A stretch of DNA of 61,909 nt, filler included, from Hausera hauseri (lineage: Eukaryota): the NCBI GenBank assembly GCA_046269625.1. It is 11 parts of 11 records of this genome, joined end to end, with 100 filler letters (N's around TTAATTAATTAA, not from the genome) between each part and the next. Parts side by side here need not be neighbours in the genome. Positions count along the whole stretch, not along the records: positions 56,076 to 61,909 come from JBJURY010181639.1; 10 more parts are not named here. One strand, given 5' to 3'. Position 1 is the stretch's first letter. Each line of letters opens with the position of its first letter. A program made the translations under genes and the position numbers. The notes under the pieces are model-generated. The model made no database searches. It was not told the origin of the DNA and saw only the letters and a program-made list of their open reading frames with translations. Positions 28,607 to 61,909 of this stretch are shown here, in pieces.

Positions 28607-28642
28607 AATCATATGAGGAAAGGTTGTATTATTATTATTTAG

Positions 28643-29295
28643 ATGAAGCTGCAAAATGATGCAATTTTCCAGATTGCAGGCCCCAGTGTAAGTGGTAAAA
28701 CACACTTTTTGTGTAAACTATTGCAGAACTACCGTGATATGTTCCATTAACCACCGTACAATCACATATTCGCATCAGGCTGTTGGTGATGATGGTGAGT
28801 CCGGTTTGACACATCGGAATTTTGAAAATTAAAATCGATAACGGTAATTGATGGGTTTGATGAGAACTGGCCTGAGAAATTACGCAATGGTGACGTTATT
28901 GTCATTGAAGATATATTTCAGGAAGCCGCGAAACAATTGGACTTCAACAACATGTTCCCGAAGATTGCACGACACCGTGGTGTGACGGTTATTTCATTAC
29001 GCAAAACATGTTCCATCAAGACGGACAGCATTGAACAAGAAGTCTAAACGTACACTATTTGGTGTTGTTTAAAAATCCCAATGAGCAGACTACCATTAAT
29101 TATGTTGCATGACAAGCATTTCCTCGCAACCGAGCTTACTTCATAGATGAATATCATGATGCTACGACCGAGCCACACGGATACCTTTTTATTGATTTTA
29201 CACAACAGTGTCCCGATGGCATGCGTGTAGAAAGAGATATTTTTAATAAGAAAGGTGTATGTGTCTATCTACAAATTCTAAAATCGACGACATAA
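28643..29295 (+). pseudogene. Polinton packaging ATPase
   Basis: IAGPSVSGKT Walker A; VIVIED Walker B; IARHRGVTV; LNVHYLVLFKNP; DATTEPHGYLFIDFTQ. Confidence 0.9.
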
Positions 29296-29539
29296 TTGAG
29301 ATAAAATGAAGAATTTTCGAAAACCAATTGTTATACGTAAACCTACCAAGCGGGTGTCCGGCAAGTAACGTGTATCAAAACGAACCGCTAAAGTCTAGCG
29401 ATTAATTAATTCTGTGCTTAGAACAACAACAGCAGTATCTAGACGTAAATTTCCGTCACAGTGGCAACGGCTATAAACAATTGCGTCTCGTCAGCATAAA
29501 TACGTTCAAAAATGCGATTCAAACGTAGTCAGCCGTAAT

Positions 29540-29829
29540 TTATTGCTTTGCTCAAGGCACCAACGAGACATAAGCGAAACATGCTACAATCATTTCCGCA
29601 ATTTGTTGAGGACGATTTGATGGAAATTTTTTACAATATCGTTGTGGGTTGCGTTGATATTGGTAGTGGAAAGTGGAATTTCCTAAAGTATTGAAAACGA
29701 CTCATTGACCTTGCCAACGCTCGTAGTAAACGCTCGTAGGTCATGTATCAGCAAGATGGCGGATTCCTTCGTGCAATTCTATTGATTGCCACGTCATTAA
29801 TGGGTAGACTCTTTGGTGGAACAGTTTAA
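29540..29829 (+). pseudogene. Polinton small protein ending in QDGGFL plus an amphipathic tail
   Basis: YQQDGGFLRAILLIATSLMGRLFGGTV* carries an adenain-type xGG|F cleavage signature. Confidence 0.6.
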
Positions 29830-29867
29830 TATAAACAATGACGGTAAGTATATAGTGATTTAGCGAT

Positions 29868-31012
29868 ATGGATGCATGGTATAACTTATTTTGTCCCAGT
29901 TTACTGAATATTTCATTAACGGTTCTTTATAATTGCTGTAGTGCTAACAAAAACGACATCATCGACTACATCGACGATAACGACGGGCGACGTGTGGTGC
30001 GATCCGCGTCATCACGTCGGGTATACTGGCGTCGACAAACTGGCAAAGACTGTTAAACAGATTCGACAACAAACCGAACGTTGGCTCAGGAAACAGTTAG
30101 CATACAGCCTAAACAAACCTATAAGAAGGCGGTTTCCAACTCATGCATATCGTGCTGCCGGTATAAATAACGTATTGCAAATGGATCATGTGGAAATGAT
30201 TCCGTACGCCAGAATCAACGATGGGTATCGGTACGTGCTGATATTTATTGATGTGTTTAGTCGTTTTTCATGTGCAATTGCTGCGAAACCTAAACCCGAT
30301 AAAAAGATTGCCAAGGCTGTTTAGATACTGATACAACAACAACAGCAGCTAAAGCATTTACAAATGGATTTGGGTAAGGAATTCTACAACGCTCACATTT
30401 CAGCAGTCTTAAAACGCTTTGGCGTAAACCACTACTCGGTGTTTTTCTAATACAAGGCTGCACTCGTCTAACAATTTAATCGAACATTGCGTGGTCGCCT
30501 AAACAAATTCTTTACGAAGCAAGGCAACAAACGCTGAGTAGATGTACAGACGGTTATTATTCATGCATACAATCATTCGACACACCGTGAAATCAACGGA
30601 ATGAGCTTGGTTGACGTAATCGATGATTTAAACATGTGGCTTTATCACAAACGAACAAAACTACAGGCAATTAAATGCCAAAAATATAAAATCGGAGCTT
30701 ACGCACTTATTTCCAAAATAAGTACAAAGCCACTCGTTAAGAATTTTAATCAGAACTACGGCGACGAGGTTTTCCGCATTTCGAAAATCAACACAAAACA
30801 AACACATATCAGACGTTTTAGAGGATGAAAACGGTGAAGAAATACGCGGTAAATTCTACAAACAGGAATTGCAGGTACTGCCCGAGAAACTCGATGCTTA
30901 TCGTATTCAGAAAATTCTACGTTCACCTGTCAAAGGTTCAAATAAACATTATCTCATCAAGTGGCACGGATGCAATGCACCGAGTTGGATTTTTTCATCA
31001 CAGATTCAATGA
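29868..31012 (+). pseudogene. Polinton integrase with C-terminal chromodomain
   Basis: LQMDHVEM..IDVFSRF; LQMDLGKEFYN; GEEIRGKFYKQEL; YRIQKILR..HYLIKWHG..SWI. Confidence 0.92.
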
Positions 31013-32047
31013 GCAGTAGCATTTACTTGGTACTTGATAGTAAAAGATCAATATCACAACATGACGACAATGACAATACTGCTAAACAATTTACCATGCA
31101 CTTGGACCAACTGGTCGATTTACGCCAAGGAGCTTGGGAAGTGGCTTTGACGGAATTCACATTTACATTTTCACCAATGATTACGTCAGAACAGTTGTAT
31201 TTACTTTACTCGACAAGAAACGTACCCTATTTCAAGTCGCTTGCGGACAATCCGACACAATAACCGATATATTCTTCGCAATTATTCGCGACAACATTTC
31301 TCGGTTTAGGCTTATTTTTCAAACTACTGTATGAAAGTAATGCATGGAAATCCCATTGAAATGCAGTTTAAATCTATAACTGATGCGCAGGCATGGAGTT
31401 TTCAATCAGTCAATGTACACTAAAAACGTCTACGTCTAGGTGGACATGTTATAATTAATGAAAAATTGGACCTTTCATCCAATGAGGAATCCCATATTAT
31501 AGTAAAGTGGACTAAGTCAAAATCAATCTTTCGCTCATATATTATACCACATGATTTATTAATGGAAACGAAACTGGAATTGTGTGAATACGTCAAGAAA
31601 ACGGCTACACTAGCTGCAAAGGCATGCGAAATAAACGCAGATCGTAATATTTCGCTTACACTACGTGACAATGTAACATATTTTGCCTTTGATAAATTAT
31701 TGTTTCGGAATTTGGGTTTTCCAAAACGCGAAGTCTATCAAGCCATTATTGGATAATCTATTGTTGCTAAATACAAACCACAACTCTCTGGAGCATTTCG
31801 TAGACTGAAAATTTAACGGACTTAACCGAATCCATACTCGTTGGTGGAGAACGTAAACAACTACTGACGTCTATCGAAGTGGATTCTGACACGTACAAAA
31901 CATAGGGTAAAACTGTTCGAGCTAATATTTTCATACATATGTATTTATCATTGTCTCCCAATATTGTGCACAGTATTTCCGTAAATATGCTAGATGAATT
32001 TTGGGATCCCATTAAATTTCTGTTTGGGTCAACGACATATTTATCGT
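31009..32047 (+). pseudogene. Polinton minor capsid (penton) protein
   Basis: IYLVLDSKRS..NTAKQFTMHLDQLVDL..WEVALTEF at the N-terminus and DLTESILVGG..LL..YLSL..ISVNMLDE..IKFLFG at the C-terminus. Confidence 0.85.
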
Positions 32048-32617
32048 NNNNNNNNNNNNNNNNNNNNNNNNNNNNNNNNNNNNNNNNNNNNTTAATTAAT
32101 TAANNNNNNNNNNNNNNNNNNNNNNNNNNNNNNNNNNNNNNNNNNNNATCCGCTGACTGCTACGTTGGAATGTTGGCATCACCAATCTGATCACCTTTGA
32201 CAAAATCTTCCACAAACCGTGTTTGACGTTGACTGTCATCCATCTCATAGTAATCCGCTAATTTCTGATAAGTGCGAAAAATCTGGTCGAATACCGTGTC
32301 ATGTCACCAACAACCTGCTTCATATGTCGTATATGAGGTTCTCGAACCGTCCAATTCTCCTTAGCACGCAGAAGTATTTCTTCGGGCAAACAGTATCATG
32401 CATCATGTAAAGGTCGATCAAGATGGTAAAGGTGACTCCGGAGACCGTCGAAGGAGTGATACAAACGAATGAGTTCTGATAAATTAGACATGTCGTAATG
32501 TCATGCCGTAACGAAGCATAAGTATTTATACTGAAATGTATCAACAACAACAAAGACACGCAAAATAAATTATATTGATTCACGAAAACAAATGCAACAA
32601 AATATGCACAAATGTAA

Positions 32618-32896
32618 TTAAATACGGTCAATCAACTTTCTCATTACCATATAAAGCGATGCAGAAAATACAAATCCAATGATGCAATTAATCCGCTTTT
32701 GTCGTTGTTGTCGTTTTCGTCTCATTTCATCCTCGATACGTTTTACGAATAGAGATCTGACTATTAATTCAATATATTCTCGCCTGCTCATTATTCTCGT
32801 TTCTGTGAACTCACATAAAAACTGTACAACAAACACATATCCAGTCATTATGTCATCGGTCAATCTTTGAATCTCACTTTCAATATACTGTTCCAT
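32618..32896 (-). CDS. Small helical tail-anchored protein, possibly Bcl-2-like
   Basis: MEQYIE..LTDDIMTGYVFVVQFLCEF..RRKRQQRQKR followed by C-terminal TM INCIIGFVFSASLYMVMRK. TATAAACA upstream. Confidence 0.4.
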   Translation of the reverse strand: MEQYIESEIQRLTDDIMTGYVFVVQFLCEFTETRIMSRREYIELIVRSLFVKRIEDEMRRKRQQRQKRINCIIGFVFSASLYMVMRKLIDRI

Positions 32897-33083
32897 TAGA
32901 TTAGTAGTAGTAGTAGTAGAAGTATGAGAACAAATGTTTATAACAGAGTAAGGCAATTTCACAGTCCATTGGGGTTATGTTTAATGTTTAATTTTACGAG
33001 TTTGTATTTTAATTTATTTTATTTTTAATTTTAATTTATTTTAAATGTTAATTTGTTTAAATTTAGAAATGTAAGCAATATCC

Positions 33084-36000
33084 CATGTATTGCGTCTCGC
33101 GCATACATGTAAAGGATCATTGTCATCATCAGATGGAGAAATATTACAACGCAGGACGAAAGGACACGTAATAGTGTCCAGCGTGTAATATTCCAATCCT
33201 CTGTCCGTACCCCGATTTTTATGAAATGCACAGGCATCATCTTGGTCCGTTTACACGATCTAAGAAGATGATCATGAATTTGCATTGCTCCGTATACCCA
33301 CGGTACTTTAATAGTACAACAGTGCATGACTTTGATAATTGTCATAGTAGAATGGAGAGTACTATGGCGTCACAGTGGTGCACGGTAAACCGGCCTATGT
33401 TTGTTCCGGTTGTTCTATAGTTGAAGCACAAATCAACTATGAACAATTTTATAATAAGCACAAGGACCACTTGAACCAATTTCAGCGGTCCAAAAAGCAA
33501 ATAGTAATAAGCATTGCCCCACGTACCCACACTACTGCAATAATAAAGTGCACACGTTAGTGGTTGTCATAGTTCAGTGGAGCAGTACTATGGCACCACA
33601 ATGAACGGGCCTACGTTTGTCCCGGTTGTTCGATAGTTGAAACTCAAATCAACTATGAACAATTTTATAATCTGTACAAGGACCACTTAAACCAGTTTAA
33701 GCGGACTCAAATACAAGCAGCATGCCATCAACAACAACCAGTAGGAAATATCAGGTCTTAGCCAGTCTTGACTACTTAATCGGAAGCTGTACAGAGCAGC
33801 AGCAGCAACAGGAGCAGCAGGAATAGCATCATCAGCAACAACAACAAGAACAGGAGGTCAATATTCCCATTACAGTCAAGTACGATCTGAACAGATCGTA
33901 CGTAGACATAAATGTGAACATGTCGGCGAAAACAACAACTCAACTGAGACATTTTCCCCAAAATGTGCTTAACTGGTTGGAATCCGAAGTGGAGAAATTC
34001 AAACATCATTGCAAAATGCAATATTGCAGAATTCGAAAATTTGGAAGGTGACAGGAAACAATGGTACCTGTCACATCGAGCCAAACTGTATTCCGACTAT
34101 TTTGTTGCCGATGTAGGCGAAAAGCTCGACGAAAAAATCGCCAAATATCCCGAAAAGGGTAGTTGCTTGCAAATTATAAAAATTGTCACTTTCGGCTTTA
34201 TCATAACAAGGTCGAGTAATATAATTTACCTGTTCGGACGATCATTCATACCGACACCTACAGCTCTAAAGCACTGTTATGCGGTATTGAATGTAAAAAT
34301 ACCGACGACGACGAATACTGTTTCATTTACAGTATTCTGGCCGTATTAAAATATGACAAAGTAGGTAGACATAGTGCATATCGTCCAAATCAGTATCCGA
34401 AGTATTTTTCCGAATTGGACTTTGATGAATGTTGGATGTCGATGAAAATGAAAACCATTCCGACTTTTGAGCGGCGTAACCGGACGCTGTTAATTAACGT
34501 GTTCCGGTACAACACAATCGTAGAAATACCGGAAGACGAAGAGATTTACAAGAACCCCCATGTGGGCATAATCTATAGAAGTCGGAACCCGAATGGACGC
34601 CCAATAAATTTGTTGTTGTTAGAGCAAAAGGAGGCGGAAATTTTTCATTATGTGGCCGCGACAAATTTGTACAGACTGTTGAACATAGAACATGACCAGT
34701 TCATCGAAAAGCGTATACCTTGTAAATGGTGTCCTGTATATCTGCATGGATTCGGGTCAGAAACAACATGGGAGAAACATGTGACACTATGCAGACAAAA
34801 TTCATCGGAAACAACAACATATATCATGCTCTTCAAAAAGGAACTAAGGTTCACTGATTGGTGAAAACAAGCTGTTTGGCATATGTAGTATATGCCGATA
34901 TCGAAGCTATCTTATCAAGACACAACATATATGACCAAAAACATGTTCCAACCGCTGTCGGTATGTTGGTAGTCTCAATAAAAGCTGCAGGCCACCAACA
35001 ATATTATGTTTTTCATGGCTAGAACTGCGTACGCGATTTCCTGCACCAGTTGGAAACAATAATAGAAACGGAAATCGCACCTCGGTACAGTAGAGATAGC
35101 AATAAACCTTTTATGTGGACAGATGAAGCTGAGCGTCTGACGTTTGCAGTCACAGATGAATGTTACCTGTGCCACAAAATATTACCGTTTGATGCACAGG
35201 AACAGCTCAAACCGGATCACGACCATTTTACCGGTCGATATCTCGGAGCCGCATGTAATTCATGCAATTTGGCAAGGTGTGTGCAGCCATTCCTACTTGT
35301 GGTATTCTATAACTTCAGGGGTTATGATTGTCACCATATTTTTAAATGGGCCTTAAACAGATTTCTGCACTGAAAACTATCCATAATTCCGACTATGATG
35401 GAGAAATACCTGTCACTGTCTGATCGTATTAACCCGTTACAGGTACACTTTCTCGATTCATTGAAATTTCTCAACGAATCTCTGGTAAAGCTGGTAAATG
35501 CCTTGCCAGATGTGCCGCTAATATTGAATCAGTTCTCCACACGTATTGCACGTAGCAAAGGCATATTCCCGTATGACATTGAGATATTGTACGAGCGACT
35601 CCAGACGACAGACGATTTACCACCGCAATGGCTCGGTATCATAGAAAAAGAATATCACGAAGCACAGTCGTTTTGGGCAGAGCTCGGCTGCAGAAACCTG
35701 TTGGAATAAATGCTTTAGTATCTGAAATTGGACGTGTACTGTTAGCCGATGTGTTTCAGACATTTCGAGCTAAAGCGTTGGAAGAAGATAGGCCGGAGCC
35801 ACACAACTTTTACTCAATACCCGGAATGAGTTGGGCATCAGCTATAATGTCACTGGATCGGGATATCCAGCCATTGCAAGACCCGGAAATGTACCGAATA
35901 TTTGATGTTGGTATTTGTGGTGGCATGACATTTGTCAACAAGCATCACGTAACCAGTGATGATACGGCATCACTGTTGTATATCGACATTAATAGCCTAT

Positions 36001-37161
36001 ACGGCTGGGCGCTTTAATAACCCTTGCCGTAAGGTTCGTTGGAATGATTAGTCGACAAACAGGACCTGGACGACATAATGGAAAATCTGCCGAGAGCAGA
36101 TACAACAGAAAACAGCTCAATCGGGTACCCGATGGAAGTCGATCTCGTGGTACCAGATGAGCTGAATAATTTTCTGGATGAATTACCGGTCGCACTAATT
36201 ATCCAATGTCCGCTGGGCTCAAAGGTGAAGAAGCTGCTTATGACGCATGAACCCAAGCAAAATTACATAGTTCATTGGCGTCTGTTGCAATTTTACATCG
36301 ATCAATCCGATTAGCACAGGCTTTAACATTCAAGCCGTGCATCAGTCGGAATTCGGAAAAACGAGCTGCAGTTTGTACGAAGTTTGAAAAAGTCTATTAA
36401 AAACTGAAAAACAAATCTTTCTACGGAAAAACAGTAGAGAATCTGAAAAAGCGGCTCAATGAACGCCTATGCAATAGCGAAAAGCCGTTGGTCACATACA
36501 CGAGCAAGGCACAATTCAGGCAATCAATGTACATTGCCGATGGTTTGGTTTCCGTGCTTTTAAACAGGAAATAAGTCGTACTAAACCAGCCAAGTTATAT
36601 AGGACAAGTGGTATTTGACCTGAGCAAGTTGCGGATGTATAAGCTGCAGTATCGCGATTTGGTACGTTACCGGCAAATGTTTGGTGGATGCAAGATAAAT
36701 ATAATTGCCGGTGACACAGACAGTTTTTTCTTGGAACTGAAACACGTCAGTCGCGAACAACTAGTGCGGCAAATGATGTTAGAAGGATTACTGGATACGT
36801 CCAATTACCCACAGAATCATTCATTGTACAGCAGCTCCATCACAAACAAAATCGGTTGTTTCAAGGATGAAAGTGAAGGTCGGCCTCAGTATCCAGAGTG
36901 AATATTTCAACGGCCAAAATGTTTAAGCCTTTTAACTGACTGTGGACCGAAATTTCGCACCAAAGGAGTTCAGTTGGAGCAGACGGAAATAAACCACGGT
37001 GATTATCGCCTTATCTATGAAGAAGAAGGACAATCAAAGGCTGTTGTGTCTCAAACGATCATCCGATCAATTGAGCAGCAGCTGTATGTGGTGATCAATG
37101 CAAAAGTCGCTTTATCATGTGGAATAAGAGTTTGGCGTACCGACATTGGCGTTTTGAATAA
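33084..37161 (+). pseudogene. Protein-primed DNA polymerase B with an endonuclease-VII-like zinc insertion, heavily frameshifted
   Basis: YADIEAIL; CYLC..DHDHFTGRYLGAACNSCN; FYNFRGYDCH; FLDSLKFL; KGIFPY; YIDINSLYGWAL; KNKSFYGKTVENL; GDTDSFF; IGCFKDE; RPKC. Confidence 0.93.
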
Positions 37162-38079
37162 AACACATATGAATTCGGCACTGATGATACAGACAGATAA
37201 AAGTGACTCATTTACTGTGCCAATTCATTGTGATTTGTGTTTTGTGAATAATGCATATTGTTCGTAGTTTTGCCTCTTGTTTTATTATCATTTAATTTAT
37301 CTATATATTTAACTAAATGTTACGAGAAACAATGTGAAAAACAAAATCCATAAAATTCATTAATTATAATCTAAAATCAAAAACAAAGTAATTCAAATCA
37401 GCGTAAACTTTCCAAGCTTCCATATTGGTAATTTAACGCCGTGCAGATCCTTGTATCCTTTCAACTTCAAAGTCAGATAGCCTTTAGCTCCTTCAGGTGG
37501 CAAAACTGCTGCTGTTGCTGTTTATCCGCCATGTGAATTGACAATTTTTGCCACATTTCCTTTGAGAAAAATCGACGATGTATCTCGGATACCTCTACCC
37601 AACACCAAACCACTGTCAGCTTTTCTATTTGTGTCGTCCACTGCATCCAAATCATTGTCGCTGATCTTTTTCATCAATAGACCATATTTATCGGTTTAAT
37701 TTTGACCGTTTGCGTCAATGGCAATTGAATAGCCTTGCGCAGCTAATGTAAGTTGTATCCATTATACAAACGCAAATTTCTGAGCGAATACTCGCTGTAT
37801 CTTGGCATTTTTAAGAGACTCGCGGAACTGTCACCTGCTGAATTGTTTTCAAAAGTCATTGTTTAAAGACAAATGCAAAATGAAATTGCATCCATATTTA
37901 TATCGGATTTGTTCATACCGTTTTTTTTTCATTGTAAACAATAGATATTTACCTTGTGAGCATTGCCTCATATCCGTATGATGCATATTGTCTCATCACA
38001 ATGATACATACTAGTTAAAATTACCTCCACGTCATTGTAGCCCATGACACTGTTTCGTTCTGTTATTGAATAAGTCATT

Positions 38080-38561
38080 CGTAATAAAGGTATACAATTT
38101 CAATTATAGCAAATTTACAATCTAAACATTGGGTTCCTTTGGAACACATTTTACAAGATGGCCGCAAAAACAAGATGGCCGCACATTAGGAATACCGTAC
38201 TCACTTTTCTTTGTTTACATATTACAAACATAAGCTGATAGTGTCGTACTTTGTCCATTATTTTCTTTTTCAAGTTCTTTAATTCATTGCGTACCTTTTC
38301 TACAGCATTAAAGTAATTTGTATCATTCAGTCGGTGAATGTAAATTTGATTTAATACAATAATTAGATTTTCTATAGAACTGCAATCTGTTGTTGTTGTC
38401 GTTGTCATTAATGCTATTGACGCTAAATCTTCTTTAAATCCAAAATTGCCTGCTGCTCTCGCATCCAAATCACTATCAAGTACTTGCCACCATCGTACCA
38501 AGTCTGAAATTGCTAATCTATCAGAATTTTGCAATTGCTTCAATTTATTAACTATTTCCAT
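38080..38561 (-). pseudogene. Coiled-coil plus IAP-type RING finger protein
   Basis: QLMFVICKQRKVSTVFLMCGHLV is a decayed C3HC4 of the IAP/Mdm2 class (C..C....+FLPCGHL). Confidence 0.65.
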
Positions 38562-38709
38562 GATGATTAATATTATTATTATAACCTACCCGTATTTATA
38601 GTTTTTGAATTATTCAACTGACCAATACGGCTAAAGATGTCACGGACCTTATTTACAGAAAGAAAGAAAGAAACAGCGAAATACATTTATTTATTTGCAT
38701 GAAATTTAG

Positions 38710-39179
38710 TCAATACAAAGCCGTAGACATCTTTTGTAAGCATAATGCGGTCAATGATCACGATACGGACATCTAATATTGTCAGGTACCATCGCCAGCG
38801 AGCTGTTATATGTTGAATGTGTCGTCATTCGCAACTCGGGAAAGTGTGAATGTAGTTGCGTAAACTTCTGACCGTCAATTTGATCTTTAATGTAAAATAT
38901 TGTATTTTTAATGTTAAAACGATTATAAATCTCTCCCATAATACATGTCACACAGAAAATTGAATTACCTTTATACCTAAGACGTCCCTGATGATGTTGA
39001 AAGAGAAATACGTCTGTAAATTTCGCCTTTTCCATCAGGTAATTCCACACAACACCAGGCTTGAATACGTACACAATCGGTTTGAAAATGTTACCGACGT
39101 CCATAATGCATAATTATTTTATTATGTACCGGGCATTATCAACTTGGAAAGCTTCAATATCTGTAAATCCTGTAGCCAT
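38710..39179 (-). pseudogene. DEDD-like nuclease-fold accessory protein
   Basis: MATGFTDIEAFQV..YIIK*LCI..YVFKPG..W..HHQG..FYIKD..CPYRDH. Shows the D-x-E ExoI-like motif and the FKPP/HG pattern I associate with Polinton accessory ORFs. Confidence 0.55.
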
Positions 39180-39329
39180 TACTTATCATGTACAAAATCA
39201 TTTTTTGCTTATAACACAAACAAAACAAATAACTATTATTATTATTATTATTATTACCACAATCATTAAACATAGGCGGTTTTGTCCATATCACCAAACC
39301 CAAATTCTTTGCATTCATTTTGTGTTGGT

Positions 39330-39735
39330 TCCTTGACACAAAACAATCCCCTCGTTCCGGTGGCATTACATTGAATTCAGCCGCTTCACATCGAAGAAAT
39401 ACAATTTGTGCTATTGCATTGCCTTTCGCAATATCATACAATAATCCGGATTGATTTTCCAGCAACATCTTAATTTCACCACGGAAGTCTGAATCAATGA
39501 CACCGCCCACAACTGTCAGTCCGAGCTCTGCCAGTCCGCTTTTCGATAAAAGTTGGCCGTAGTAACCGGGTGGAATCGCCAATCGAATCTCAGTCGTTAT
39601 GCATTTAATTGTGATATCCGAAATTGTCGTATTAACATTGGAAAACACATCGTAGCCGGCACTGTTTGCTGTAACACGTCTTGGTACAACTGCATTTTTG
39701 TCTGTTAAGATAATCTTTACATTATTCATTATCAT
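39330..39735 (-). pseudogene. dut: dUTPase with a damaged C-terminal motif V
   Basis: SAGYDV; IPPGYYGQLLSKSGLA; GGVIDSDFRGEIK; GNAIAQIVF; ERG. Confidence 0.93.
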
Positions 39736-40619
39736 TATTCTTATACGTATACCAGTATTAAAATTACACGTATATTTATACTCGTTAATTGGGTTAATNN
39801 NNNNNNNNNNNNNNNNNNNNNNNNNNNNNNNNNNNNNNNNNNTTAATTAATTAANNNNNNNNNNNNNNNNNNNNNNNNNNNNNNNNNNNNNNNNNNNNGA
39901 TTTGTTTATTTACTGGAACTATTAACTTCCCTGTCCTTTTTGAACGGAAGATTGAGGTGAGGTAATTTCCTAACTTAGGGTTTTCCCAAACATATGTATT
40001 CTCGAAAACTTCTCTTGCTGGGGCAACTTTGCTGTAAAACATAGCTTCTTTAATTATTTTCTTACTACAATATTCTGTGGATCTTCTTTTCTAAAAGTAC
40101 GTTGACTTCAGTTATTCTATATTCAATAACTTTCTTCTTTACGGACTTTACCTTCTGAGAGGTACTTGGTTCGATTTGTTGATTTTCATATTTTAGCTTA
40201 TCTTTTCTTTCTTTCTTGAATAAGTAGTTGTAAATAGATAGCGTTTTCTTGGGCTGGGGCTTTTCTTCTAATTTATGTTTCTTTATTATTGTTTCTGGCC
40301 TCCATTCTTTTGTGTATTTTTCTAGAGACTTTGGCGCTACATGGAGTATTTTGTTTCCTTTTCCGATCGCTTGTAGGTCACTTTTATCTTCCTCTTGTCC
40401 TTCCATAGGTTTTTGCACTGTGGTCGTCATATTATGCTTGCATGTTGACTGGACAGTTCTGATCGGATAGTAAGGTTTGATATTTCTTCTATATTTTATA
40501 TCTATTTGCTCGGGCTTCAAGGAACTACGTAAATTGTATATGGGGTTTCTAAGGTCCCATTCGTGTTCCAGTTTAATGATTTATAAATTTCTTGCTGATA
40601 TTTGCAGCGTTGGCTAGCC

Positions 40620-41060
40620 GTTAGAAGTCTTTTAATTCTCATTGCTTCGATCATTAACTTGAAGAAGGCTTCTGGAGCGGTCGGTCGATTTGTTCCTTGT
40701 ACAGTTTTCTCCATTCGTTCCTGGATTATTGGGTGGGTGGCCATTTCCCTAATTCCGGCAATTTTTGCATCGGACATTTCTAGTAACACGATTTATCGTT
40801 GTACGTTATATCATGTCAGCATACAGCAGTAAAGACAATAATTCAATTTTGAACGGACTTGTTTAATGTCTTTTCCTCTTATGAGCTGCTCTTTTATTAA
40901 ACCGGTCACTTCTGCATACGATTCTTGGACATGTTTATGGGGTTTATGACTGCAGAGCATATTTCGACCCCATCCCCCTCTCTAATAGATACTTCTATGG
41001 GTATTTCATGTCCATCATCTCCTATGACACAATTTATCGCGATGATTCTTACGTTGCAAC
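40620..41060 (-). pseudogene. DEDDh exonuclease-fold domain
   Basis: RIIAINCVIGDDGHEIPIEVSIREGDGVEICSAVINP..VTGLIKEQLIRGKDIKQVRSKL..LT*YNVQR*IVLL..KIAGIREM; homologous to 1-430. Confidence 0.7.
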
Positions 41061-41149
41061 CATCTTGGATTAGCCTATATGACTGACGGTGTTCATCCTT
41101 TTCTACCTCGTTTAAAATTTGTTCAAATTCTAGGGCTGGCAACCGTCGA

Positions 41150-43300
41150 TTACAATCTTCTCTGCTACTCTAAATTCTAGGCCGTAGTCGATACGTTCTA
41201 AACCTGTCTGTTTATTTTAAATGTACTGAACCGGTATTGACGTCCTTCGTTGGAGTTCAAAGGTTGGTTCTATATATTATAATATAGTTCTCCGTCGGTT
41301 AAGTGGGTATATATGTCTTGAATTTTGACTAGTAAGTTTCGGATTAATTTCTTTAAGGAATATGCTTTAGCCTGATTATCTTCGCGCATTGCGTAAAGGA
41401 AGACTGTGCTATTCTCCTCCGTAATGCCTTTTAGATTATTGGGGATTTCGCTGATTTTTGAAATTTCGATATATGTTTTTGCTTGTAGGGCTTCGGTTAT
41501 CATCCTGTAGAGACTTTGAATTTGGAATAAATACTGTAGTTTGTTCCTGCAAATATTCGTTGATGCTAATTCGGCTATCCATACTTACAATTCTGAAAAA
41601 TAGAAAATAAGGGTCAATTCTATAACAAAGTATTGTTCTAAATCTGAACCAATTCTTTGTTTGATGGTGGAATAACCCGACCTGTAATAGTCAAGTTACT
41701 CCATCATTGATTTTATCCTGTGGTACTATTACCCTTAACTCCCTCTTGGTGATTTTATGACGCTTATTACAGCAGTTTTGGTAATAAATCGGAGAAACGC
41801 AATGAAAGTTACGAGAGCAAACGCTGACGATCTAATGATCGATATTATTGACAAAGTTGTCCATTTAGTTAGGTTTTTTGTTTTAGCAGTAGTCATATTT
41901 TTGCCTTCCGTTTCTTCGTTAATGAGTGGTTTCGTTAAGCCAATTTCGTTTAGGGTCCGTACCGTAAACGTTCTACTTTGTTTGTTCTCTGCACCTATTT
42001 GTATTACGTAGTCTGTTTTGGATTTCAAGTAGGTACATTTGATTTGATAGATACCTTTTGTCAGCGTTACTTTTTGATTATTATGTAATGTTTGGCAGCT
42101 TATTTCTACATCGTAGTTAAGTGCTTCCTTCACAACGAATGTTATTTCATGCTGTTATGTCCAATATTTTATAGGAATCATTTCTAAATCCTTCTGCGGT
42201 AACCCACTTGTCTGGAGGATTTAGATGGAAGTTGAAGTAGTCATATTCCTTCTTGTAATCGTAATTCTGCTTGTTGTCATTTCAGATGGAATTCTTCAAA
42301 TTGGATTTTCCAATTGATAACTTCCTAAGTAAATACTCGACTGGTTCGATAGAATTTCATATAAGTCTATCCGAATTCTATATTTATTTCTCCGAGTTAA
42401 CTTACAACACTTATTCGGCCTTTCGGCGTCGATTTGACAGTACTGTTGATTATGGGCTGCTTTGTCCTCTCTTGTGAATTGAACTGTGATTACTAGTCTC
42501 TTAATTAACCGTCCTTTTTTGTTTATTTGGGTACAGTTGTCCTTTGGATTTTACGTTATACTGGCTATATTTTCTTATAGAATTCGTTTTAATGGGTCTA
42601 TGGACTGAAGCATATCTTCTAGCTCGATATTAAGGTAGTCTCTATAAGTTCGTGGTATAATTAAGTGTGAATCCAGGTTTATTTCGGCGTGTACCTTATT
42701 ACAGTTAGGCAGATATGAACGATAACTGAGAGCATAAGAGTGTCCGTACTCTACGCTGCAACAAATTGTATCGTCATCTGGTTCAAATTTACTATCAGTC
42801 TCTGCTTGGTTAAATAGGTTGTTAAATAGTATATGGATTTGCCCCTCATATGGTCCTGGTATCTTAAACCCGACACATAAGGCCTCTGGCAAAAAATAAT
42901 CTAATTTTATTGCTCGTAAAAATTTTTCGTCTTTTTGTTCTGATTTGCGTCCTGGAGTTTCTTCCCTTGGTGGTGAAGTTTTTAAAGCGATTTTCCAGAT
43001 TCCATATATATTGCTCAACGAAGTTTCATCGACCCACCATTGGGCGTTAGACTTAGGCGTTAGGACAGCAATTAACGATAAGGCTACTATTATCTGTGCG
43101 TAAGGTACCGGTCTTGTGACAACTGACGAGGTCTTGTTTTCTCGCGGTCTTAGATTGTAGTGTTTAGCTGGTCTTATATCTGTTTTAACTACTCTTTGGA
43201 TTGATACGACTTCCGCTTTTCCGTTTTTGTTAACATAGACCGTGGTTGACGTTGTGCGGATGATTTCATATGATCCTCTTCCGGTACGTGTTAATTTCAA
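41150..43300 (-). pseudogene. Integrase C-terminus in frame with signal peptide, ectodomain, FN3-like domain, TM segments and IPNNLKG domain
   Basis: ORF 42575-43300 runs from GSYEII..VSIQRV into YAQIIVALSLIAVLTPKSNA|QWW. FN3-like LKSKTDYVIQIGAEN. TM WTTLSIISII..ALVTFIAFL. EIPNNLKGITEEN at 41426-41446. Confidence 0.6.
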
Positions 43301-55975: not shown

Positions 55976-57407
55976 NNNNNNNNNNNNNNNNNNNNNNNNN
56001 NNNNNNNNNNNNNNNNNNNTTAATTAATTAANNNNNNNNNNNNNNNNNNNNNNNNNNNNNNNNNNNNNNNNNNNNTATGGTGATATGTTGTAGAATGCGG
56101 CTTGAAAGTGATTTCTTTTTTAAGAGTAAGGGAACAAGTTTTAATGTAGGATTTATGGTCAGAACCCAACGATAAGAATGTTTGTGGTGCCCACATTCAC
56201 CCAATGGGTAAATTGACGGAAAAACCTTGTTTAAATATTATAGTTTAGTGAAATATTTTTTAGTTAGTTTGTTTGTTTGCCTGTATTATTGAAAAAAGAA
56301 TTAATAATCTTTGTGACTTACATTTTGACTTTAGCAGCCATCAATGATTGTAATTTTGTCAAGCTATTTTATTTTGGATATTTCTGCCATGTTCAGCATT
56401 TTATAATTCATTAATTGATCCTTTATTTTGTAATTGCTGAACATATCGTTTTGGCCATTTTAATACTAATTTCGGTCGATTTTCATTGAGTCTTTATTCG
56501 CCATTTTATTCAGAAATCAGAAAATTTCTGTCTTTGGATTATTCTAATCATTTTGGACATATCATAACCTTAATAAAATGGTGTCAAACTCTTGTCAGCC
56601 AACTCTGGAAACAACTAGTGTAGTTTCCTTCAGTAATCGTCCAAACAATCTACTTGATTTTACAGAAACATTTATGCCATCTAAAACCCTATTTGCCTTA
56701 CTAAAATGGTCGACAAAGATGTAATTATACAGAATACCGATGTCAATTCTTCACTGGACGAGACTTACCAACTTCACAATGATGACGGCATATCATTATA
56801 AGAGTCAGTTGTCGTAATTGATGTAGAATGATTAAATGCTTCATTAACGACATTTGGTTCAGCCGAATGTCAAAAAATTGATTTGTTGCCACTTGACGAC
56901 ATTGAAAATATTGATGAAATGTTAAGTGCATTGTTGTCAACCAATGAACAGGATGTCAAATTGACGTTTGAATGAGCAGAGGAAGACAACGTGTCCGACT
57001 GGTAGTTTGGTGAGCATTTGGTAGAGTTTACAATGAAGTTTCTGCGCAGGAGGCATTTATGCTTTCAATCGACTAACAAATCGTAATCAGCCAGGAAATC
57101 GGAGCCTATTATGGGCGATCTGATGTTGGCTATGTGAAATTTCCAGGAGAATATCCCTGGTATGTTGTAGAATGTGAAAGTCAGTTCTCTGGTACCTACA
57201 ATGTTCAAAGGTTGACCACAAGCAATGAAGAGTGTAGGACAGAAAACTGTGTTAGATATAGGAGCGAAAGACAAAGGAAGAAGTGAAAAAGCAGCTCCTG
57301 GATCAATAAGAAAATATATGTGTGATGTGTTTTCACATAACAGATCAGCTTTCAACAGAAAGACTGCAGAGGCGGTGTTGAAACGGCCAGAAGACTGAAC
57401 GATGTTG

Positions 57408-57451
57408 CCTGCGCCAGAAGGTGCCATACATCTGGCGGAATTGAGTTTTTT
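57408..57451 (-). promoter_or_regulatory. Gag-Pol -1 frameshift signal
   Basis: A AAA AAC (57445-57451) followed by the stem CGCCAGA..TCTGGCG. The -1 frame reads into MAPSGAG and the protease. Confidence 0.75.
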
Positions 57452-58486
57452 GGAGGATTTGGAGGAAAGGAAGAAGAGGAAGAAAAGCTAGGAAATTTTT
57501 TGTCGTAATGTCTATAACCAGGCACACATGATCTGGCCTGTGACTGATATTTGTTGTGGTATATACAAATAGGGTTATGTACAGCGTATCACTCACTAAA
57601 GAATCGACAGCCCAAAAAACATTTCCTTGATTCCTTTCGAAAACACGTGTGATAGAAACAAGTCATGCGTCCGCCTGGTGAAATTGGCCGAGAAGAGTGC
57701 ATTGAAGTGATTCGCTCCCGTGAACGTCTGGTTTCACTTCGTCGAGGCCCATTAAGATTACTTAGTTGGATAGTAATGGCCAAAATCAATTGTTGTAACA
57801 TGTCAAACTGTTGCTGCATCATTTGCAATTGTTTACAAAAGAGTGTTGTATCTGTAGTTGGAGCAGATGTGGTTGCAGCAGCAACAGGGAGAGAACTGTT
57901 AGTATGAAGAATCTTAAAGGATTTGTCAGCCATAATTGCCAGTTTTCGATAGCCGTGGATTCGTCGACAACGGTTAGTAAGGCTCTGATTGATGTGGGCA
58001 AAGAAGATAAGAAATAATGGCGAATGAAATTTGCGTTATTCGTAGGGGTCACTCCTAGCGCACTGAGCTGCAGAATGGCCGTTTGGAGAAAGTCGGATGG
58101 CTTTTGGTTTCCTACCGCGTGGTCATTAAAATACTTTTGTATTATGTTGTCGGTCGAAGGATCCGTGACATGCAGTACAGCTTCACAGAGTGTCTTGTAA
58201 GGTGTCGAGGATTGTAGCAGCTCGGAGATATTATTAACCTGCTGCTTGAAGTTGGCAGTCAGAAGAATTAAAAGGCTATTGGCTCGCACAAAAGAATTTG
58301 TAATGTTGTTCGATTTTAGCTACTGCTGGTGCAACTGAAGCCATGGTTTGCTGTAGTTGTTTTTTCGAGGAAGAATTCAACAAAAGGTAAATTTAACGAA
58401 ACTCGTGACTGTTGGGAGTGTGGCAAACGATAGACGTTGCCTGTATTTGTGGATTTGTCATCCGAGAAGGATGGATTTGAATCCGG

Positions 58487-58720
58487 TCCACCTCGGAGAC
58501 GAAAGTTGAGCACAAAATGGATAACTGGACGTTTATGGCATACGAAGGAAAGAAGTAAGTCAACGGGATGTACAGTGATACCTCGATGTGTAAAAGAGAA
58601 GTTGGCAGTGTCGAGTAAGGAGGATAGAGAGGTGTATAATAGTTGCGCCATGGCATTGAGTGGGGCCTTAATGGTCATTATGTGTTGGTTGTTATTGAAG
58701 ATAAGGAAGGAGAGTTGCAG
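58487..58720 (-). CDS. Ubiquitin-like domain in frame with the Gag N-terminus
   Basis: LQLSFLIFNNNQHIMTIKAPLNAMAQLLYTSLSSLLDTANFSFTHRGITVHPVDLLLSFVCHKRPVIHFVLNFRLRGG: 78 aa, ubiquitin-like spacing, RLRGG end. Confidence 0.7.
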
Positions 58721-59859
58721 CGAAGCAACTCCAGGAGAATGGTAAAATGCAAAAGGAGCTTGTGTGGTTTGCTTCCGTGCTAACAAGAGATATGGGTGTG
58801 CAGCCAGGATAGCGGTGGCAAGTGATGATTGGAGTAAAAGAGTGTCCAAAAACATTAGGCTGAAATTCTTTTTAAAGTAAAAAATGGTGTGAACTATGAA
58901 GGATTTGTAAATGCGAGGAACATGGCCGCACCGGTGGACATAAATCAGTAAAAAGAACCTCGCCCACCTGTGTTTGAATATCTGAGTCCTGGGTGTCGAA
59001 TTTGGACACATCTTAAGTGTTTTCCCCAGTGGATCATCTTTATTGATCAGGGGGACACCGGTCTCGTCGACATCTCTCGAATGTTGGTTCTTTCTTTTGG
59101 TAAATAGATTATTGCTGAAAGACTTTAAGAGGATATTGTGAAGAATTGTAACGAATTTTAAATTCGTCGACTGATTCTGGCTACTTAAAAAATGGAGATA
59201 CTGACAGTAAAATGACTTTACCAACAATTTCATCTGATTTCCGAATGGTTATACTATCACCATTATCAATGTTTATCTTTGGCATGAATTCCAGATGATA
59301 CTTTGGCGACCGAAAAACGTGTTTGCTGTTGCAGTTGTGGGCAAGATGGCAGACATGAGAGGAAGAAGTGGTTGTGTTTGTAAGTACGTTGTTGGCGTTA
59401 TTTTTTTACGCATCTCATTCAGCATATGTTGAAAGATTGCACCTTTGTTAACGTTAGTGAGACTGTTTTTATCAGTGAGATAAAAATCGGAATTTGAACT
59501 GCTTTGAAGGGAATCATGAATAGATGAATTTATGTCAAAACCTATCTGTGATGTTGACCAAATATTGAAAGAATCGGTATTAATTGAAGGTTTATTATCT
59601 GAACTATGTGATGACGCAGCAGCAGACCGGAATGTCGACAATGGATGCCTCTGACTCTGTTACAGAAGCCTTTTAGACTGTAAAACATGTTTCTGAAAAG
59701 GTGTTGATTGTGTTTGGATTGCTGTTTTCAGTTTGATTGTTGTTGGGGTAACAGAGTTAAAAAACCACTTTACGTCATTGTGAAGATCATCATGTGATTG
59801 GGAAGACAAATGTGAAGATTTTGTTATTTTTATTAAGAGAAAATACACCAGAATTTGTA

Positions 59860-60600
59860 AGTGGTGTAGCTGTCTGTTCTGGCATGCGATAACGGAGACA
59901 AAATGCAGCTGCAATACGCAGCAATGATTGATATCGTTCAAGAACAATGTCCTTTTCTTTAAGGTTTAAAACCCCGTTTGTGATCGGTACCATTCGAAAG
60001 ACGTATCAAAGGTAACGACAACCGACTGTTTATCTTCCAGCATGAGATACAAACTAACTCTGGCTGCCAAAATACCAAACCGGTATCGGAATTCAATCGG
60101 TAATGCGCACAGAATCTCAGTGCATCTCGATGCACGGCCTTGTGTCAAATACAATTGTGCCAGATTTAATTGGACCTTAACGAGATTTTCATCGTCCATG
60201 GAGTTCTTGTCGATTGAATCAAGATACTTCTCAAGAAATTTTATAGCTTGCTATGTCTGCTTTTCTTTGCACAATTGTGCTGACTTCGTTAATACCACTC
60301 GGATACAAATCGAACTGTGGACCAACAACTCCGAAGCCATGTTTTTGATAGAATCCCCTTGGTTATTGTAATAGAGAAAGAGCAAATTGTTCTCGTAAAT
60401 AGCTTTGCATTGCTTCGAAATCAGCTTTTGTCGACAGACATCGTTCATGGCTACTTTGATTTTCTTCCGACTATCGAATATGTTCTGATCTTTGTTAATA
60501 CAAACAACGTAATTTGCAGCAACTCCGAAAACGTGACATTCACCGCTCCTCTTCTTCAGAACGTCATGGTAAATATTACTAACTTTCATTTTCTTTTATT
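59860..60600 (-). pseudogene. SRP72: Processed SRP72 fragment
   Basis: GVAANYVVCINKDQNIFDSRKKIK..KLISKQCKAIYENNLLFLYYNNQ; VQLNLAQLYLTQG; GILAARVSLY; LLRIAAAFCLRY. No introns seen; stops and frameshifts present. Confidence 0.85.
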
Positions 60601-61909
60601 TTTGGCTAATAACATCCATACGATTCGCTGAACTTGTATTGAGAACCCTATGGGCAGCATCTGAATGTCTGATTTTCTTTTTAATTAGTTCACTTGCAAT
60701 TAATTGTCTTGTAGAATACGACAGGTTCTTTCGATTCTTATCGGATATTTTAAAGCATACTATTGCTTCAATATTTGGTGATAAGACAAATTCAAGTTGA
60801 TTTTCTAACACCTTTTCTTGAACGTATTCAAGTCCAATTGACAACATTATATTAACAGTATTTTGAAGAATGGCCTTTTCTTTGACGCTATACAATTGGG
60901 TATTTATTGGTCGAATCTGAAGAGGTCTGATGATGTCAATAATATTCAGGAGAACATCGAGAAATGCAGCCTGTTTAGATTGCAACCATCGTGAAATAGA
61001 AACTTGATTTCCCAGAAATGACTCATAAATACCGAGTAATCGTTTCTTCGTCGCATAATCATTCATATCCGACGTTGGCCATTGAATTAGATTTTAAACG
61101 CCAGATGGAGATGCGAATGATAAATGAAAATATGGAAAAATGTATTGCTTATATTTCGTCATTTCTTAAAATTGTTTTTCGTTAATTTATTCATCAGTCA
61201 GATCGTTGAAAACCATCAAATTTGCGGCTTCGACCATTTCTCATTATCATAAATCTTTAAACTTGACAATATTCAAGTAATTTTCATGTATGCCAGTAAC
61301 GACAAGATTTATATCACCAGTGGAATTTGCATATTTAAGAATATTCTGGCATCTTATACTGCAATCACTAAGATGTTTACTCTTATCTCTGTTTAATACT
61401 TTTTCTGATTATGTGTCAGCAAAAATATCGTTCCATACAGAGAAAATATTTTATTGAACATCTTTAATTCAAATATTCATTGACTTCAAATCAAGATAAG
61501 TAATTTCAGCAACAACTTTTTGCTTAAGAAACCGCAATAAATTAAACATGATCGAGTATCTCTATTGGACATATCAATTAAATAATTCAGAACAGTCCGA
61601 TCACAAGCTAAACCTTCCATTTGCAAATATCCGAAAGACGGTGTACCAATTGATTGTAATCTGGTGGTGACACTTTCAAAACGTAACAATATGGGCGTAA
61701 CGCTTTCAATGCTGAGGAATATAAATCATTGCATATGCATATGATAGGTCTTAATAGTTAGTTTCTGTTTCTTTTCATTTGTATCCGATCGCCGCGGTGT
61801 ATTTATAGCGTTGACTAACATTCACGACAGGTTCTGACATACCATCGATTTCATCAATAACTAAACATGATGGCTGCATATGTTTGGATTTTGAAGCGCT
61901 TTTGAAAGA
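60596..61909 (-). pseudogene. CHTF18: Processed CTF18 (RFC-like clamp loader) fragment
   Basis: PSCLVIDEIDG Walker B; NRDTRSCL; GIHENYL; FHLSFAS; IRPINTQLYSVKEK; LSPNIE; LSYSTRQLIASE. No introns over ~1.3 kb; many stops. Confidence 0.88.

What the first reader, a model, noticed from the sequence alone, without database searches (positions are those of the whole stretch)
58316..59233. Ubiquitin-like domain ending RLRGG fused directly ahead of Gag
Seen: 78 aa with ubiquitin-like spacing (two strands, helix, F.F.H.G..+.P.D.L..F, IHFVLNFRLRGG) in one frame between a long leader and the Gag N-terminus. The sister element in contig 9 has the homologous domain ending IHLTLHFHIR-GG. Established: host deubiquitinases cleave after LRGG, and some pestiviruses use ubiquitin inserts as processing signals. 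Inference: host DUB/ULP proteases release Gag from a leader-UBL-Gag precursor, or the freed UBL acts as a decoy or conjugatable modifier. The P1' residue is Pro here (usually poorly cleaved) and Ser in contig 9.
Basis: partly seen in the sequence, partly recalled or inferred. Interest (0 to 1): 0.8.

Follow-up and report, generated by a model that had tools for sequence, protein, structure and literature searches.

The report
Ubiquitin-tailed domain ahead of retrotransposon Gag
A family of retrovirus-like jumping genes carries, just ahead of its capsid (Gag) protein, a conserved 75-78-residue domain that ends in ubiquitin's own cleavage tail (RLRGG); this could let host enzymes cut Gag free from whatever is fused upstream, but the ubiquitin fold itself could not be confirmed.

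Summary
The minus-strand ORF 59233-58316 holds a 78-aa stretch (58720-58487) ending RLRGG, followed by Pro.

It is a true coding domain. Three public ORFs (P0001/P0002, P0003) carry the same domain at 32-48% identity (E 3e-23). In all of them FRLxGG and an Asp two residues after GG are invariant, and a small residue (S/T) follows GG. A poorly conserved, S/P/K-rich linker of 30-45 aa comes next, then a well conserved Gag, all in one uninterrupted frame.

The window copy is dead. A frameshift (about 58360-58365) and a stop (58322-58320) separate the domain from Gag.

The ubiquitin fold is not shown:
- Pfam and PDB sequence searches give no hit.
- hhalign against 94 ubiquitins aligns only the tail, and the core scores no better than shuffled columns.
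- AlphaFold2 gives pLDDT 38-39, although the order and spacing of its secondary-structure elements match ubiquitin.

Unexpectedly, what lies upstream of the domain is different intronless host cDNA in every copy: CTF18 and SRP72 here, DIS3L1 and CNOT1 in P0002, CARM1 in P0003. In the two relatives these fragments are in frame with Gag.

Best reading (about 0.4): a highly diverged ubiquitin-like pro-domain, cut after GG by host deubiquitinases to release Gag. Main rival: an uncleaved N-terminal Gag domain.

The parts
58487..58720 (-). 78-aa ubiquitin-like-tailed domain. Predicted order: strand, strand, helix, strand, strand, (short helix or strand), strand, tail.
   Evidence: Translation. Conserved in P0003, P0002 and P0001 at 32-48% identity. 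AF2 secondary structure, at low confidence.
58487..58501 (-). Codons for R-L-R-G-G, the ubiquitin-type tail. F-R-L-x-G-G is invariant in the four sequences.
   Evidence: hhalign aligns columns 59-78 to ubiquitin 59-76, P 0.0033. Family copies show third-position changes in both Arg codons (58493, 58499).
58484..58486 (-). The residue after GG. It is Pro in this copy, Ser in most copies of this family, and Ser or Thr in relatives.
   Evidence: 58486 G>A in 1208 of 1281 depth units. Alignment.
58721..58759 (-). Conserved 13-aa stretch (..H-S-P-G..) where similarity between the families begins, just ahead of the first strand.
58391..58483 (-). Poorly conserved linker rich in S/P/K/T/N (15-27% identity, variable length) between GG-x and the conserved Gag part. 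Its first residue, Asp, is invariant.
58760..59233 (-). N-terminal 158 aa of the same ORF. No relatives found and origin unknown. Repeated in the genome, but less so than the domain.
   Evidence: no hit for this part. Depth 250-1500.
58360..58365 (-). Break 1: the frame changes within or next to a run of A. Upstream of it the homology to relatives is in the domain's frame; downstream it is in the Gag frame. It could be a real mutation or a homopolymer assembly error.
58320..58322 (-). Break 2: a stop codon in the Gag frame, inside a stretch that is open in the relatives.
57944..58390 (-). Gag, conserved N-terminal part (60-68% identity to relatives), in the frame of ORF 57819..58289.
   Evidence: No Pfam or PDB hit.
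57589..57942 (-). Gag C-terminal part with a Cys/His knuckle, in a third frame. The frame break at about 57942-57943 is absent from a minority of family copies.
   Evidence: Insertion behind 57942 in 11 contigs.
57065..57427 (-). Retropepsin-like ORF (..LID-P-GA.. and ..IIGSDFL..), one frame back (-1) from the Gag end. Similarity to other copies ends at about 57075.
   Evidence: Motifs read by eye, with no Pfam hit. Loose ends at 57075.
59981..60577 (-). Intronless SRP72 fragment (human residues 247-353 and 367-438) containing an in-frame stop (60251-60253) and followed 13 codons after its last matched residue by another (59966-59968), same strand.
   Evidence: E 2.5e-16; E 3e-7.
60632..61000 (-). 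Intronless CTF18 (CHTF18) fragment (human residues 746-866). The same frame runs up to the piece's end, with a Walker-B-like motif near 61860. It abuts the SRP72 fragment within 57 nt.
   Evidence: E 2e-18..

Best explanation
The stretch is the N-terminal pro-domain of the Gag polyprotein of a high-copy, retrovirus-like (LTR-type) retrotransposon family of an animal genome. It is about 75-78 residues long. Its secondary-structure order and spacing resemble ubiquitin, and it ends in ubiquitin's own tail (F-R-L-R/C-G-G). A small residue (S/T), an invariant Asp and a disordered linker follow, and then Gag.

Most likely it is a very diverged ubiquitin-like module. Host deubiquitinases or UBL proteases would cut after GG and so release Gag with a defined N-terminus from whatever is translated upstream. 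That would matter in this family because the upstream part differs in every copy seen and consists of captured host cDNA fragments.

Shown: the domain is coding, conserved and in frame with Gag in intact relatives, and the tail is invariant. Inferred: the beta-grasp fold, the cleavage and the enzyme. The window copy itself is a dead copy, with a frameshift, stops, Pro after GG and a truncated pol.
For: - Coding and conserved: the 310-codon open frame was longer than the longest open frame in all 2000 simulations. There is 46% identity over 91 aa to P0003, E 3e-23, and E 7.6e-7 against 1.84 billion proteins for P0001.
- Continuous ORF from the domain through the linker into Gag in P0001, P0002 and P0003.
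- F-R-L-x-G-G-x-D is invariant. The identity profile is domain 32-48%, linker 15-27%, Gag 52-68%.
- The tail aligns to ubiquitin 59-76 in register; the domain is 78 aa and ubiquitin 76 aa.
- Both Arg codons of the tail carry third-position changes in family copies, and the residue after GG is Ser in most copies.
- In the single-sequence AF2 model the secondary-structure elements fall within 1-2 residues of ubiquitin's, except residues 54-59, predicted as a strand where ubiquitin has a 3-10 helix; the 4-sequence model gives no final strand.
- For P0003 residues 478-557, four of the five named protein-language-model neighbour families are ubiquitin-like: PF00240 twice, Dsc3_N and Rad60-SLD.
- The upstream parts are heterologous host fragments in every copy.
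- No Met sits at a conserved position in or next to the domain.
- Precedent: pestiviruses carry ubiquitin inserts directly ahead of NS3, often behind mosaic fragments (PMC13517609).
Against: - No Pfam ubiquitin-clan hit at E<=10 for the window domain, and none at E<=1 for P0002 or P0003.
- No PDB hit at E<=10.
- Without the tail, the hhalign score against ubiquitin equals that of shuffled columns.
- AF2 pLDDT is 39 for the single sequence and 37.8 with the 4-sequence alignment. Foldseek finds nothing.
- The window copy's language-model neighbours are PCNA_N fragments, with low recognition. The scores for P0003 are only 0.78-0.81.
- From established knowledge, most DUBs also read the ubiquitin body, which is not recognisably kept here.
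- One family has Cys at the R74 position.
- Only three independent sequences are in hand, plus a truncated list of read-level differences.
Confidence: 0.4

Rival explanations
1. It is an ordinary, uncleaved N-terminal domain of Gag, in the way matrix-like or accessory domains sit ahead of capsid. Its fold may or may not be a beta-grasp. The G-G at its end would be a conserved hinge into the linker, and the match to ubiquitin's tail would be convergence or a relic without function.
For: No detectable similarity to ubiquitin outside the tail. The fold is not predicted with confidence. The strand-hairpin block (F-x-I-F-x-N-N-x-H) is as conserved as the tail, so the tail does not stand out statistically. 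R74 is Cys in one family.
Against: Five of the six tail positions are invariant across families at 32-48% identity, and they are exactly the positions needed in a DUB active-site cleft. The residue after GG is small in intact copies. From established knowledge, UBL domains that remain part of a larger protein usually lack GG. The linker that follows is disordered, as expected at a processing site.
Confidence: 0.33
2. The site is a processing site, but the cutting enzyme is not a host DUB. It would be the element's own aspartic protease, or another host protease that reads the basic R-x-R motif.
For: The element encodes a retropepsin-like ORF, and retroelement polyproteins are normally cut by their own protease. 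The domain-linker boundary is where such a cut would be expected.
Against: From established knowledge, retropepsins prefer hydrophobic residues on both sides of the cut, not G-G/S-D. The conserved pattern is L-x-G-G rather than a dibasic site. The protease motif in this copy reads D-P-G.
Confidence: 0.12
3. The released piece (upstream part plus domain ending in GG) acts as a conjugatable modifier or a decoy for the host ubiquitin system.
For: Only the free GG end that cleavage would create.
Against: The body is too diverged for known E1 enzymes. The N-terminal parts differ in every copy, which is hard to reconcile with a defined modifier.
Confidence: 0.04
4. It is not a protein feature: a chance open frame over leader or LTR DNA, with conservation at the nucleotide level (for example a primer-binding site under the GG codons).
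For: The DNA under G-G-P-D-S-N reads like part of a tRNA T-arm box. Some LTR elements, such as Ty1 (established knowledge), have the primer-binding site inside gag.
Against: The frame is kept over more than 130 aa between families at 32-48% amino-acid identity, with only whole-codon gaps. The copy depth is lower than that of Gag, whereas an LTR should be higher. The spacing from TGG to the T-arm-like box is wrong for a tRNA 3' end. No tRNA or Rfam hit. No repeat of it in the piece.
Confidence: 0.02

Closest known systems
Ubiquitin or ubiquitin-like inserts in cytopathogenic pestiviruses (BVDV Osloss and others), placed directly ahead of NS3
   Same: A ubiquitin-type module ending in GG sits directly upstream of the protein that must be released. 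It often lies behind mosaic host or viral fragments acquired by RNA recombination. Processing is left to host ubiquitin hydrolases (PMC13517609; established knowledge from Meyers/Tautz).
   Different: In pestiviruses the insert is recent, is nearly identical to host ubiquitin and marks rare variants. Here the module is a fixed, old and highly diverged part of a retrotransposon family's Gag ORF. Its fold and cleavage are unproven.
Natural ubiquitin-fusion genes (ubiquitin-L40/UBA52, ubiquitin-S27a, FUBI-S30)
   Same: An N-terminal UBL ending in GG is made as a fusion and removed by host proteases to give the mature downstream protein.
   Different: In those genes the UBL is the very N-terminus and is directly fused without a linker. 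Here there is heterologous sequence upstream and a 30-45-aa linker downstream.
LTR-mediated retroposition (Tan et al. 2016, PMC5131818; Bs1 of maize)
   Same: Partial, intronless host mRNA fragments lie inside LTR-retrotransposon sequence on the same strand, sometimes from two or more parental genes. They arise through template switching by reverse transcriptase. This fits CTF18+SRP72, DIS3L1+CNOT1 and CARM1.
   Different: That work does not describe in-frame fusion of the captured pieces to Gag through a conserved module. The upstream element flank and the microsimilarity at the junctions could not be examined here.
DDI1/DDI2 (N-terminal UBL plus retropepsin-like domain)
   Same: A UBL is combined with retroelement-type protein parts in one polypeptide (PMC7072860, seen).
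   Different: DDI1 is a host gene, its UBL lacks a GG tail and is not cleaved off, and it has no Gag. No sequence similarity was found.

Membership tests
Ubiquitin-like beta-grasp superfamily | Beta-grasp fold (mixed sheet gripping one helix) | tested here: inconclusive
AF2 pLDDT is 39 and 37.8 with the 4-sequence alignment. Foldseek finds no match.
Ubiquitin-like beta-grasp superfamily | Sequence match to a ubiquitin-clan profile or to solved UBLs | tested here: not met
   Pfam gives no hit. PDB phmmer gives no hit at E<=10. The hhalign core score equals that of shuffled columns. Language-model neighbours are mixed.
Processed ubiquitin-type modifiers (ubiquitin, ISG15, NEDD8) | C-terminal L-R-L-R-G-G-type tail at the end of a domain of about 76 aa | tested here: met
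   F-R-L-R/C-G-G ends a 74-78-aa domain in all four sequences. It aligns to ubiquitin 59-76.
Processed ubiquitin-type modifiers (ubiquitin, ISG15, NEDD8) | Cleavage after GG by DUB or ULP enzymes | not testable with these tools
   Needs expression or in vitro cleavage.
LTR retrotransposon (gag-pol element) | Gag with Cys/His knuckles, followed by a retropepsin in the -1 frame | tested here: inconclusive
   The motifs and frame order are read from the translations, and the family has a high copy number. No Pfam or PDB hit supports Gag or the protease. The protease motif reads D-P-G in this copy.
LTR retrotransposon (gag-pol element) | Long terminal repeats, primer-binding site, RT and integrase | tested here: not met
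   None is present within the piece: no long direct repeat and no tRNA-like site. The element is cut off at about 57075, before RT. The absence may simply be due to truncation and the contig end.
LTR-mediated retrocopy (Tan et al. 2016) | Partial intronless host cDNA, same strand, embedded in element sequence; several parent genes are possible | tested here: met
   CTF18 746-866 and SRP72 247-438 are colinear without introns. DIS3L1+CNOT1 and CARM1 occur in the relatives. Only the downstream element flank is seen.
LTR-mediated retrocopy (Tan et al. 2016) | Microsimilarity at the switch points, and element sequence on both flanks | not tested
Pestivirus-type captured host ubiquitin | Insert nearly identical to host ubiquitin | tested here: not met
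   Only the tail resembles ubiquitin.

The most novel reading that the evidence does not exclude
The domain is a cleavable ubiquitin-like 'adaptor' that makes Gag independent of its N-terminal context. Because a host DUB trims everything upstream of GG, the element can be translated from the start codon of any host cDNA fragment it has captured, or perhaps any host exon it is spliced to. Only in-frame captures would stay translatable, which would explain why the captured host pieces are in frame with Gag in both independent relatives and why they differ from copy to copy. This would be a retrotransposon analogue of the ubiquitin-fusion trick, and a standing mechanism for building host-Gag fusion proteins.
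Probability: 0.2. Interest if true: 0.85.

Novelty: new variant of a known kind. Interest (0 to 1): 0.62.

Why it matters
If the domain is cut by host ubiquitin-type proteases, it would be the first fixed ubiquitin-like processing module known in a retrotransposon Gag. So far this trick is known only from sporadic pestivirus recombinants and from a few host ribosomal-protein genes. It would show how a retroelement can outsource the first step of polyprotein maturation to the host. It would also explain how these elements tolerate, and keep translating through, captured host coding sequence, a route to new chimeric proteins. The claim is directly testable with a short expression construct. Even if cleavage fails, the family offers a clean set of in-frame host-Gag fusions made by reverse-transcriptase template switching.

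Tried and rejected
- **ATG at 58345 as the true Gag start.** It has a good Kozak-like context and would make the domain an upstream ORF. Rejected: in the relatives this ATG lies inside codons of one continuous ORF.
- **Chance ORF in a G-poor strand.** Rejected by simulation and by protein-level conservation.
- **LTR or primer-binding site under the GG codons.** Rejected on copy depth, spacing and frame conservation.
- **The whole frame-1 openness from 61066 to 58316 as one giant element ORF.** Resolved instead into a CTF18 fragment, an SRP72 fragment and the element ORF. SRP72 homology could not be shown beyond 59981.
- **Searches that found nothing:**
  - Genome contigs, which holds prokaryotes only
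  - word searches with the 305-aa and 109-aa queries
  - IMG/VR and JGI metagenomes, with both the domain and the Gag profiles
  - Pfam for every element ORF
  - PDB for the domain and for Gag
- **Structure.** Both AF2 jobs gave unusable models, and Foldseek on the first gave noise.
Full report
**What is in the piece**

Everything relevant lies on the minus strand of 56076-61909. The next codon is Pro.

Downstream, in three other frame segments, lie:
- a Gag-like ORF (58289-57819)
- a second Gag piece with a Cys/His knuckle (57933-57589)
- a retropepsin-like ORF (57427-57065; motifs LID-P-GA and IIGSDFL)

Similarity to other copies stops at about 57075, and the sequence becomes AT-rich. No LTR, tRNA or Rfam feature is present in the piece.

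**Is the feature more than chance?**

RLRGG is expected 0.002 times per piece in six frames. The open frame of 310 codons was longer than the longest open frame in all 2000 first-order Markov simulations.

Contigs of two public runs, laid on 56900-59900, show that the whole stretch belongs to a high-copy repeat: 3610 contigs in organism A and 185 in organism B. Summed depth is highest over the protease part (24,000-43,000 at 57102-57404). It is 4,000-7,700 over Gag, 1,200-3,750 over the domain and 250-1,000 further upstream. In most of those copies the residue after GG is Ser (58486 G>A). Both Arg codons of the tail show third-position changes. No majority change is listed in the two Gly codons, but that list is truncated.

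**Relatives**

Word searches found nothing.

The exhaustive phmmer search of 1.84 billion representatives with the 305-aa ORF gave one hit, P0001. It is 996 aa, E 7.6e-7, and matches query residues 159-293 only. Its cluster mate is P0002 (1051 aa). A word search with the domain-to-Gag part of P0002 gave P0003 (900 aa, 52% identical to that part).

All three come from ENA contigs of 3.5-8.8 kb, where each was called as one uninterrupted ORF.

Aligned with the window, read through with X at its breaks, they show this layout:
- a conserved start (..H-S/L-P-G..)
- the domain (32-48% identity)
- F-R-L-R/C-G-G, then S/T/P, then an invariant Asp
- a poorly conserved S/P/K-rich linker of 30-45 aa (15-27% identity)
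- Gag (52-68% identity)

The domain alone gives E 3e-23 between the window and P0003. It is therefore a genuine protein domain.

In the window copy the two are separated by a frame change at about 58360-58365, beside a run of A, and by a stop at 58322-58320. Further breaks lie at about 57942 and elsewhere, so this copy is dead.

An ATG at 58345 that I first took for the Gag start lies inside codons of the continuous ORF in the relatives. That idea was dropped.

**Is it ubiquitin-like?**

Against:
- There is no Pfam hit for the window domain at E<=10, nor for P0002 or P0003 at E<=1.
- There is no PDB hit at E<=10.
- To make a direct test, I fetched 94 distinct ubiquitin sequences from giant-virus contigs with a degenerate DNA pattern. 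I then compared their alignment with the three-family domain alignment by hhalign. Only columns 59-78 align, to ubiquitin 59-76 (P 0.0033).
- With the last six columns removed, the score is no better than for column-shuffled queries: 43% of the shuffles reach it.
- AlphaFold2 gave pLDDT 39 for the single sequence and 37.8 with the four-sequence alignment.
- The protein-language-model search placed the window copy next to PCNA_N fragments, with low recognition.

For:
- The domain has ubiquitin's length.
- In the single-sequence AF2 model the strand-strand-helix-strand-strand-...-strand elements fall within one or two residues of ubiquitin's. The exception is residues 54-59, predicted as a strand where ubiquitin has a 3-10 helix. 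The model from the four-sequence alignment gives a helix there and no final strand.
- The tail is in register.
- The intact relative P0003 has four ubiquitin-like families (PF00240 twice, Dsc3_N, Rad60-SLD) among its five named language-model neighbours, though only at scores of 0.78-0.81.
- The invariant tail positions correspond to ubiquitin R72, L73, G75 and G76, which from established knowledge are the ones a DUB cleft needs. The variable one is R74.

I put the chance of a true beta-grasp at about one half.

**What lies upstream**

This was the unexpected part. The frame of the ORF stays almost open up to 61066, with 7 stops in 917 codons against roughly 45-65 in the other frames.
- Window 61000-60632 matches human CHTF18 residues 746-866 (E 2e-18).
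- Within 57 nt of it begins an SRP72 fragment, matching human residues 247-353 and 367-438 (E 2.5e-16 and 3e-7).
- Both are intronless and on the element's strand, and there are in-frame stops in and around them.

The relatives show the same kind of thing with other genes:
- P0002 starts at the start codon of a DIS3L1-like protein (residues 45-361, E 4e-25) and continues into a CNOT1 MIF4G fragment (439-544, E 1e-16; Pfam E 5e-19). The domain and Gag follow.
- P0003 carries a CARM1 fragment (136-398, E 4e-80) ahead of the domain.

The known process that makes such structures is LTR-mediated retroposition, in which reverse transcriptase switches templates between element RNA and host mRNAs. It is documented in several animals, including two-gene chimeras (PMC5131818).

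What that work does not describe is that in both relatives the captured pieces form one open frame with Gag, and that similarity between the families begins just before this domain. No Met sits at a conserved position near the domain.

I cannot exclude ascertainment, because long ORFs are easier to find. But the exhaustive search found no short, out-of-frame relatives either.

In the window itself the SRP72 piece is followed by two stops just ahead of the 305-aa ORF, so the shared frame there may be coincidence. The 158 aa between that point and the domain have no relatives.

**Mechanism**

The best-supported reading (about 0.4) is a highly diverged ubiquitin-like pro-domain whose L-x-G-G tail is cut by host DUB or UBL proteases. 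That cut would free the linker and Gag from a variable N-terminal part.

This parallels ubiquitin inserts ahead of pestivirus NS3, which also sit behind mosaic fragments (PMC13517609), and the host's ubiquitin-ribosomal protein fusions.

Pro after GG in the window copy would, from established knowledge, block most DUBs. It is a private change of a dead copy, since the family majority has Ser.

The rivals are:
- an uncleaved N-terminal Gag domain with a conserved Gly-Gly hinge (about 0.33)
- cleavage by the element's own or another protease (about 0.12)
- a modifier or decoy role (about 0.04)
- a non-protein feature (about 0.02)

**Limits**

- There are only three independent sequences.
- No DNA of the relatives was available (look-up of encoding contigs closed).
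- Earlier findings were not open.
- The organism is coded and unknown. The strong CARM1, CHTF18, SRP72 and DIS3L1 matches to vertebrate proteins suggest an animal, but that is an inference.
- The clade (Mag or other) cannot be assigned without RT.

**Verdict**

The ubiquitin-tail and Gag-fusion parts of the interpretation hold. The fold and the cleavage remain open. The captured host-gene fragments add a second point of interest.

Noticed in passing
window 59981-61000 (minus strand; the frame stays open up to 61909): A chimeric intronless retrocopy. A CTF18/CHTF18 fragment (human residues 746-866, with a Walker-B-like motif further upstream near 61860) is joined within 57 nt to an SRP72 fragment (human 247-438). 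Both are in the same frame. There are in-frame stops at 60596-60598, 60251-60253 and 59966-59968. It lies directly upstream of the element on the same strand and looks like LTR-mediated retroposition involving two parental genes.
   Followed up: partly
P0002 (ENA contig 7611 nt), P0001 (3554 nt) and P0003 (8766 nt): The relatives are single ORFs of 900-1051 aa in which host fragments are fused in frame to the domain and Gag. P0001 and P0002 carry DIS3L1 from its own start codon plus a CNOT1 MIF4G fragment; P0003 carries CARM1. P0001 and P0002 share the same chimera but differ by a few substitutions and small in-frame indels, so they are two copies, alleles or samples. Why all the junctions are in frame is unexplained.
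   Followed up: partly
window 57134 / 58171: Contigs of both runs join 58171 back to 57134 with two extra bases between them (depth 285 in X1 and 5 in X2). This suggests that some copies carry a head-to-tail repeat or rearrangement of a Gag-protease unit of about 1 kb.
   Followed up: no
window 57102-57404: Summed contig depth over the protease-like part is 5-10 times that of Gag (24,000-43,000 against 4,000-7,700), with many loose ends at 57075, 57336, 57425 and 57442. Either the protease is shared by several families at 80% identity or more, or a separate high-copy repeat overlaps it.
   Followed up: no
window 57299-57304: The protease active-site motif reads Asp-Pro-Gly in this copy rather than the usual Asp-Thr/Ser-Gly. 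Pfam gives no retropepsin hit for the ORF at E<=10.
   Followed up: no
window 58760-59233: The 158 aa of the ORF upstream of the conserved domain have no relative among 1.84 billion proteins, yet they are open and moderately repeated (depth 250-1500). They could be a family-specific N-terminal extension, an unrecognised captured fragment, or element leader kept open.
   Followed up: partly
window 58468-58492: The DNA under G-G-P-D-S-N-P contains a stretch that resembles a tRNA T-arm box (GGATTCAAATCC) shortly after a TGG. The spacing does not fit a primer-binding site, and no tRNA or Rfam hit was found. It is probably chance.
   Followed up: yes
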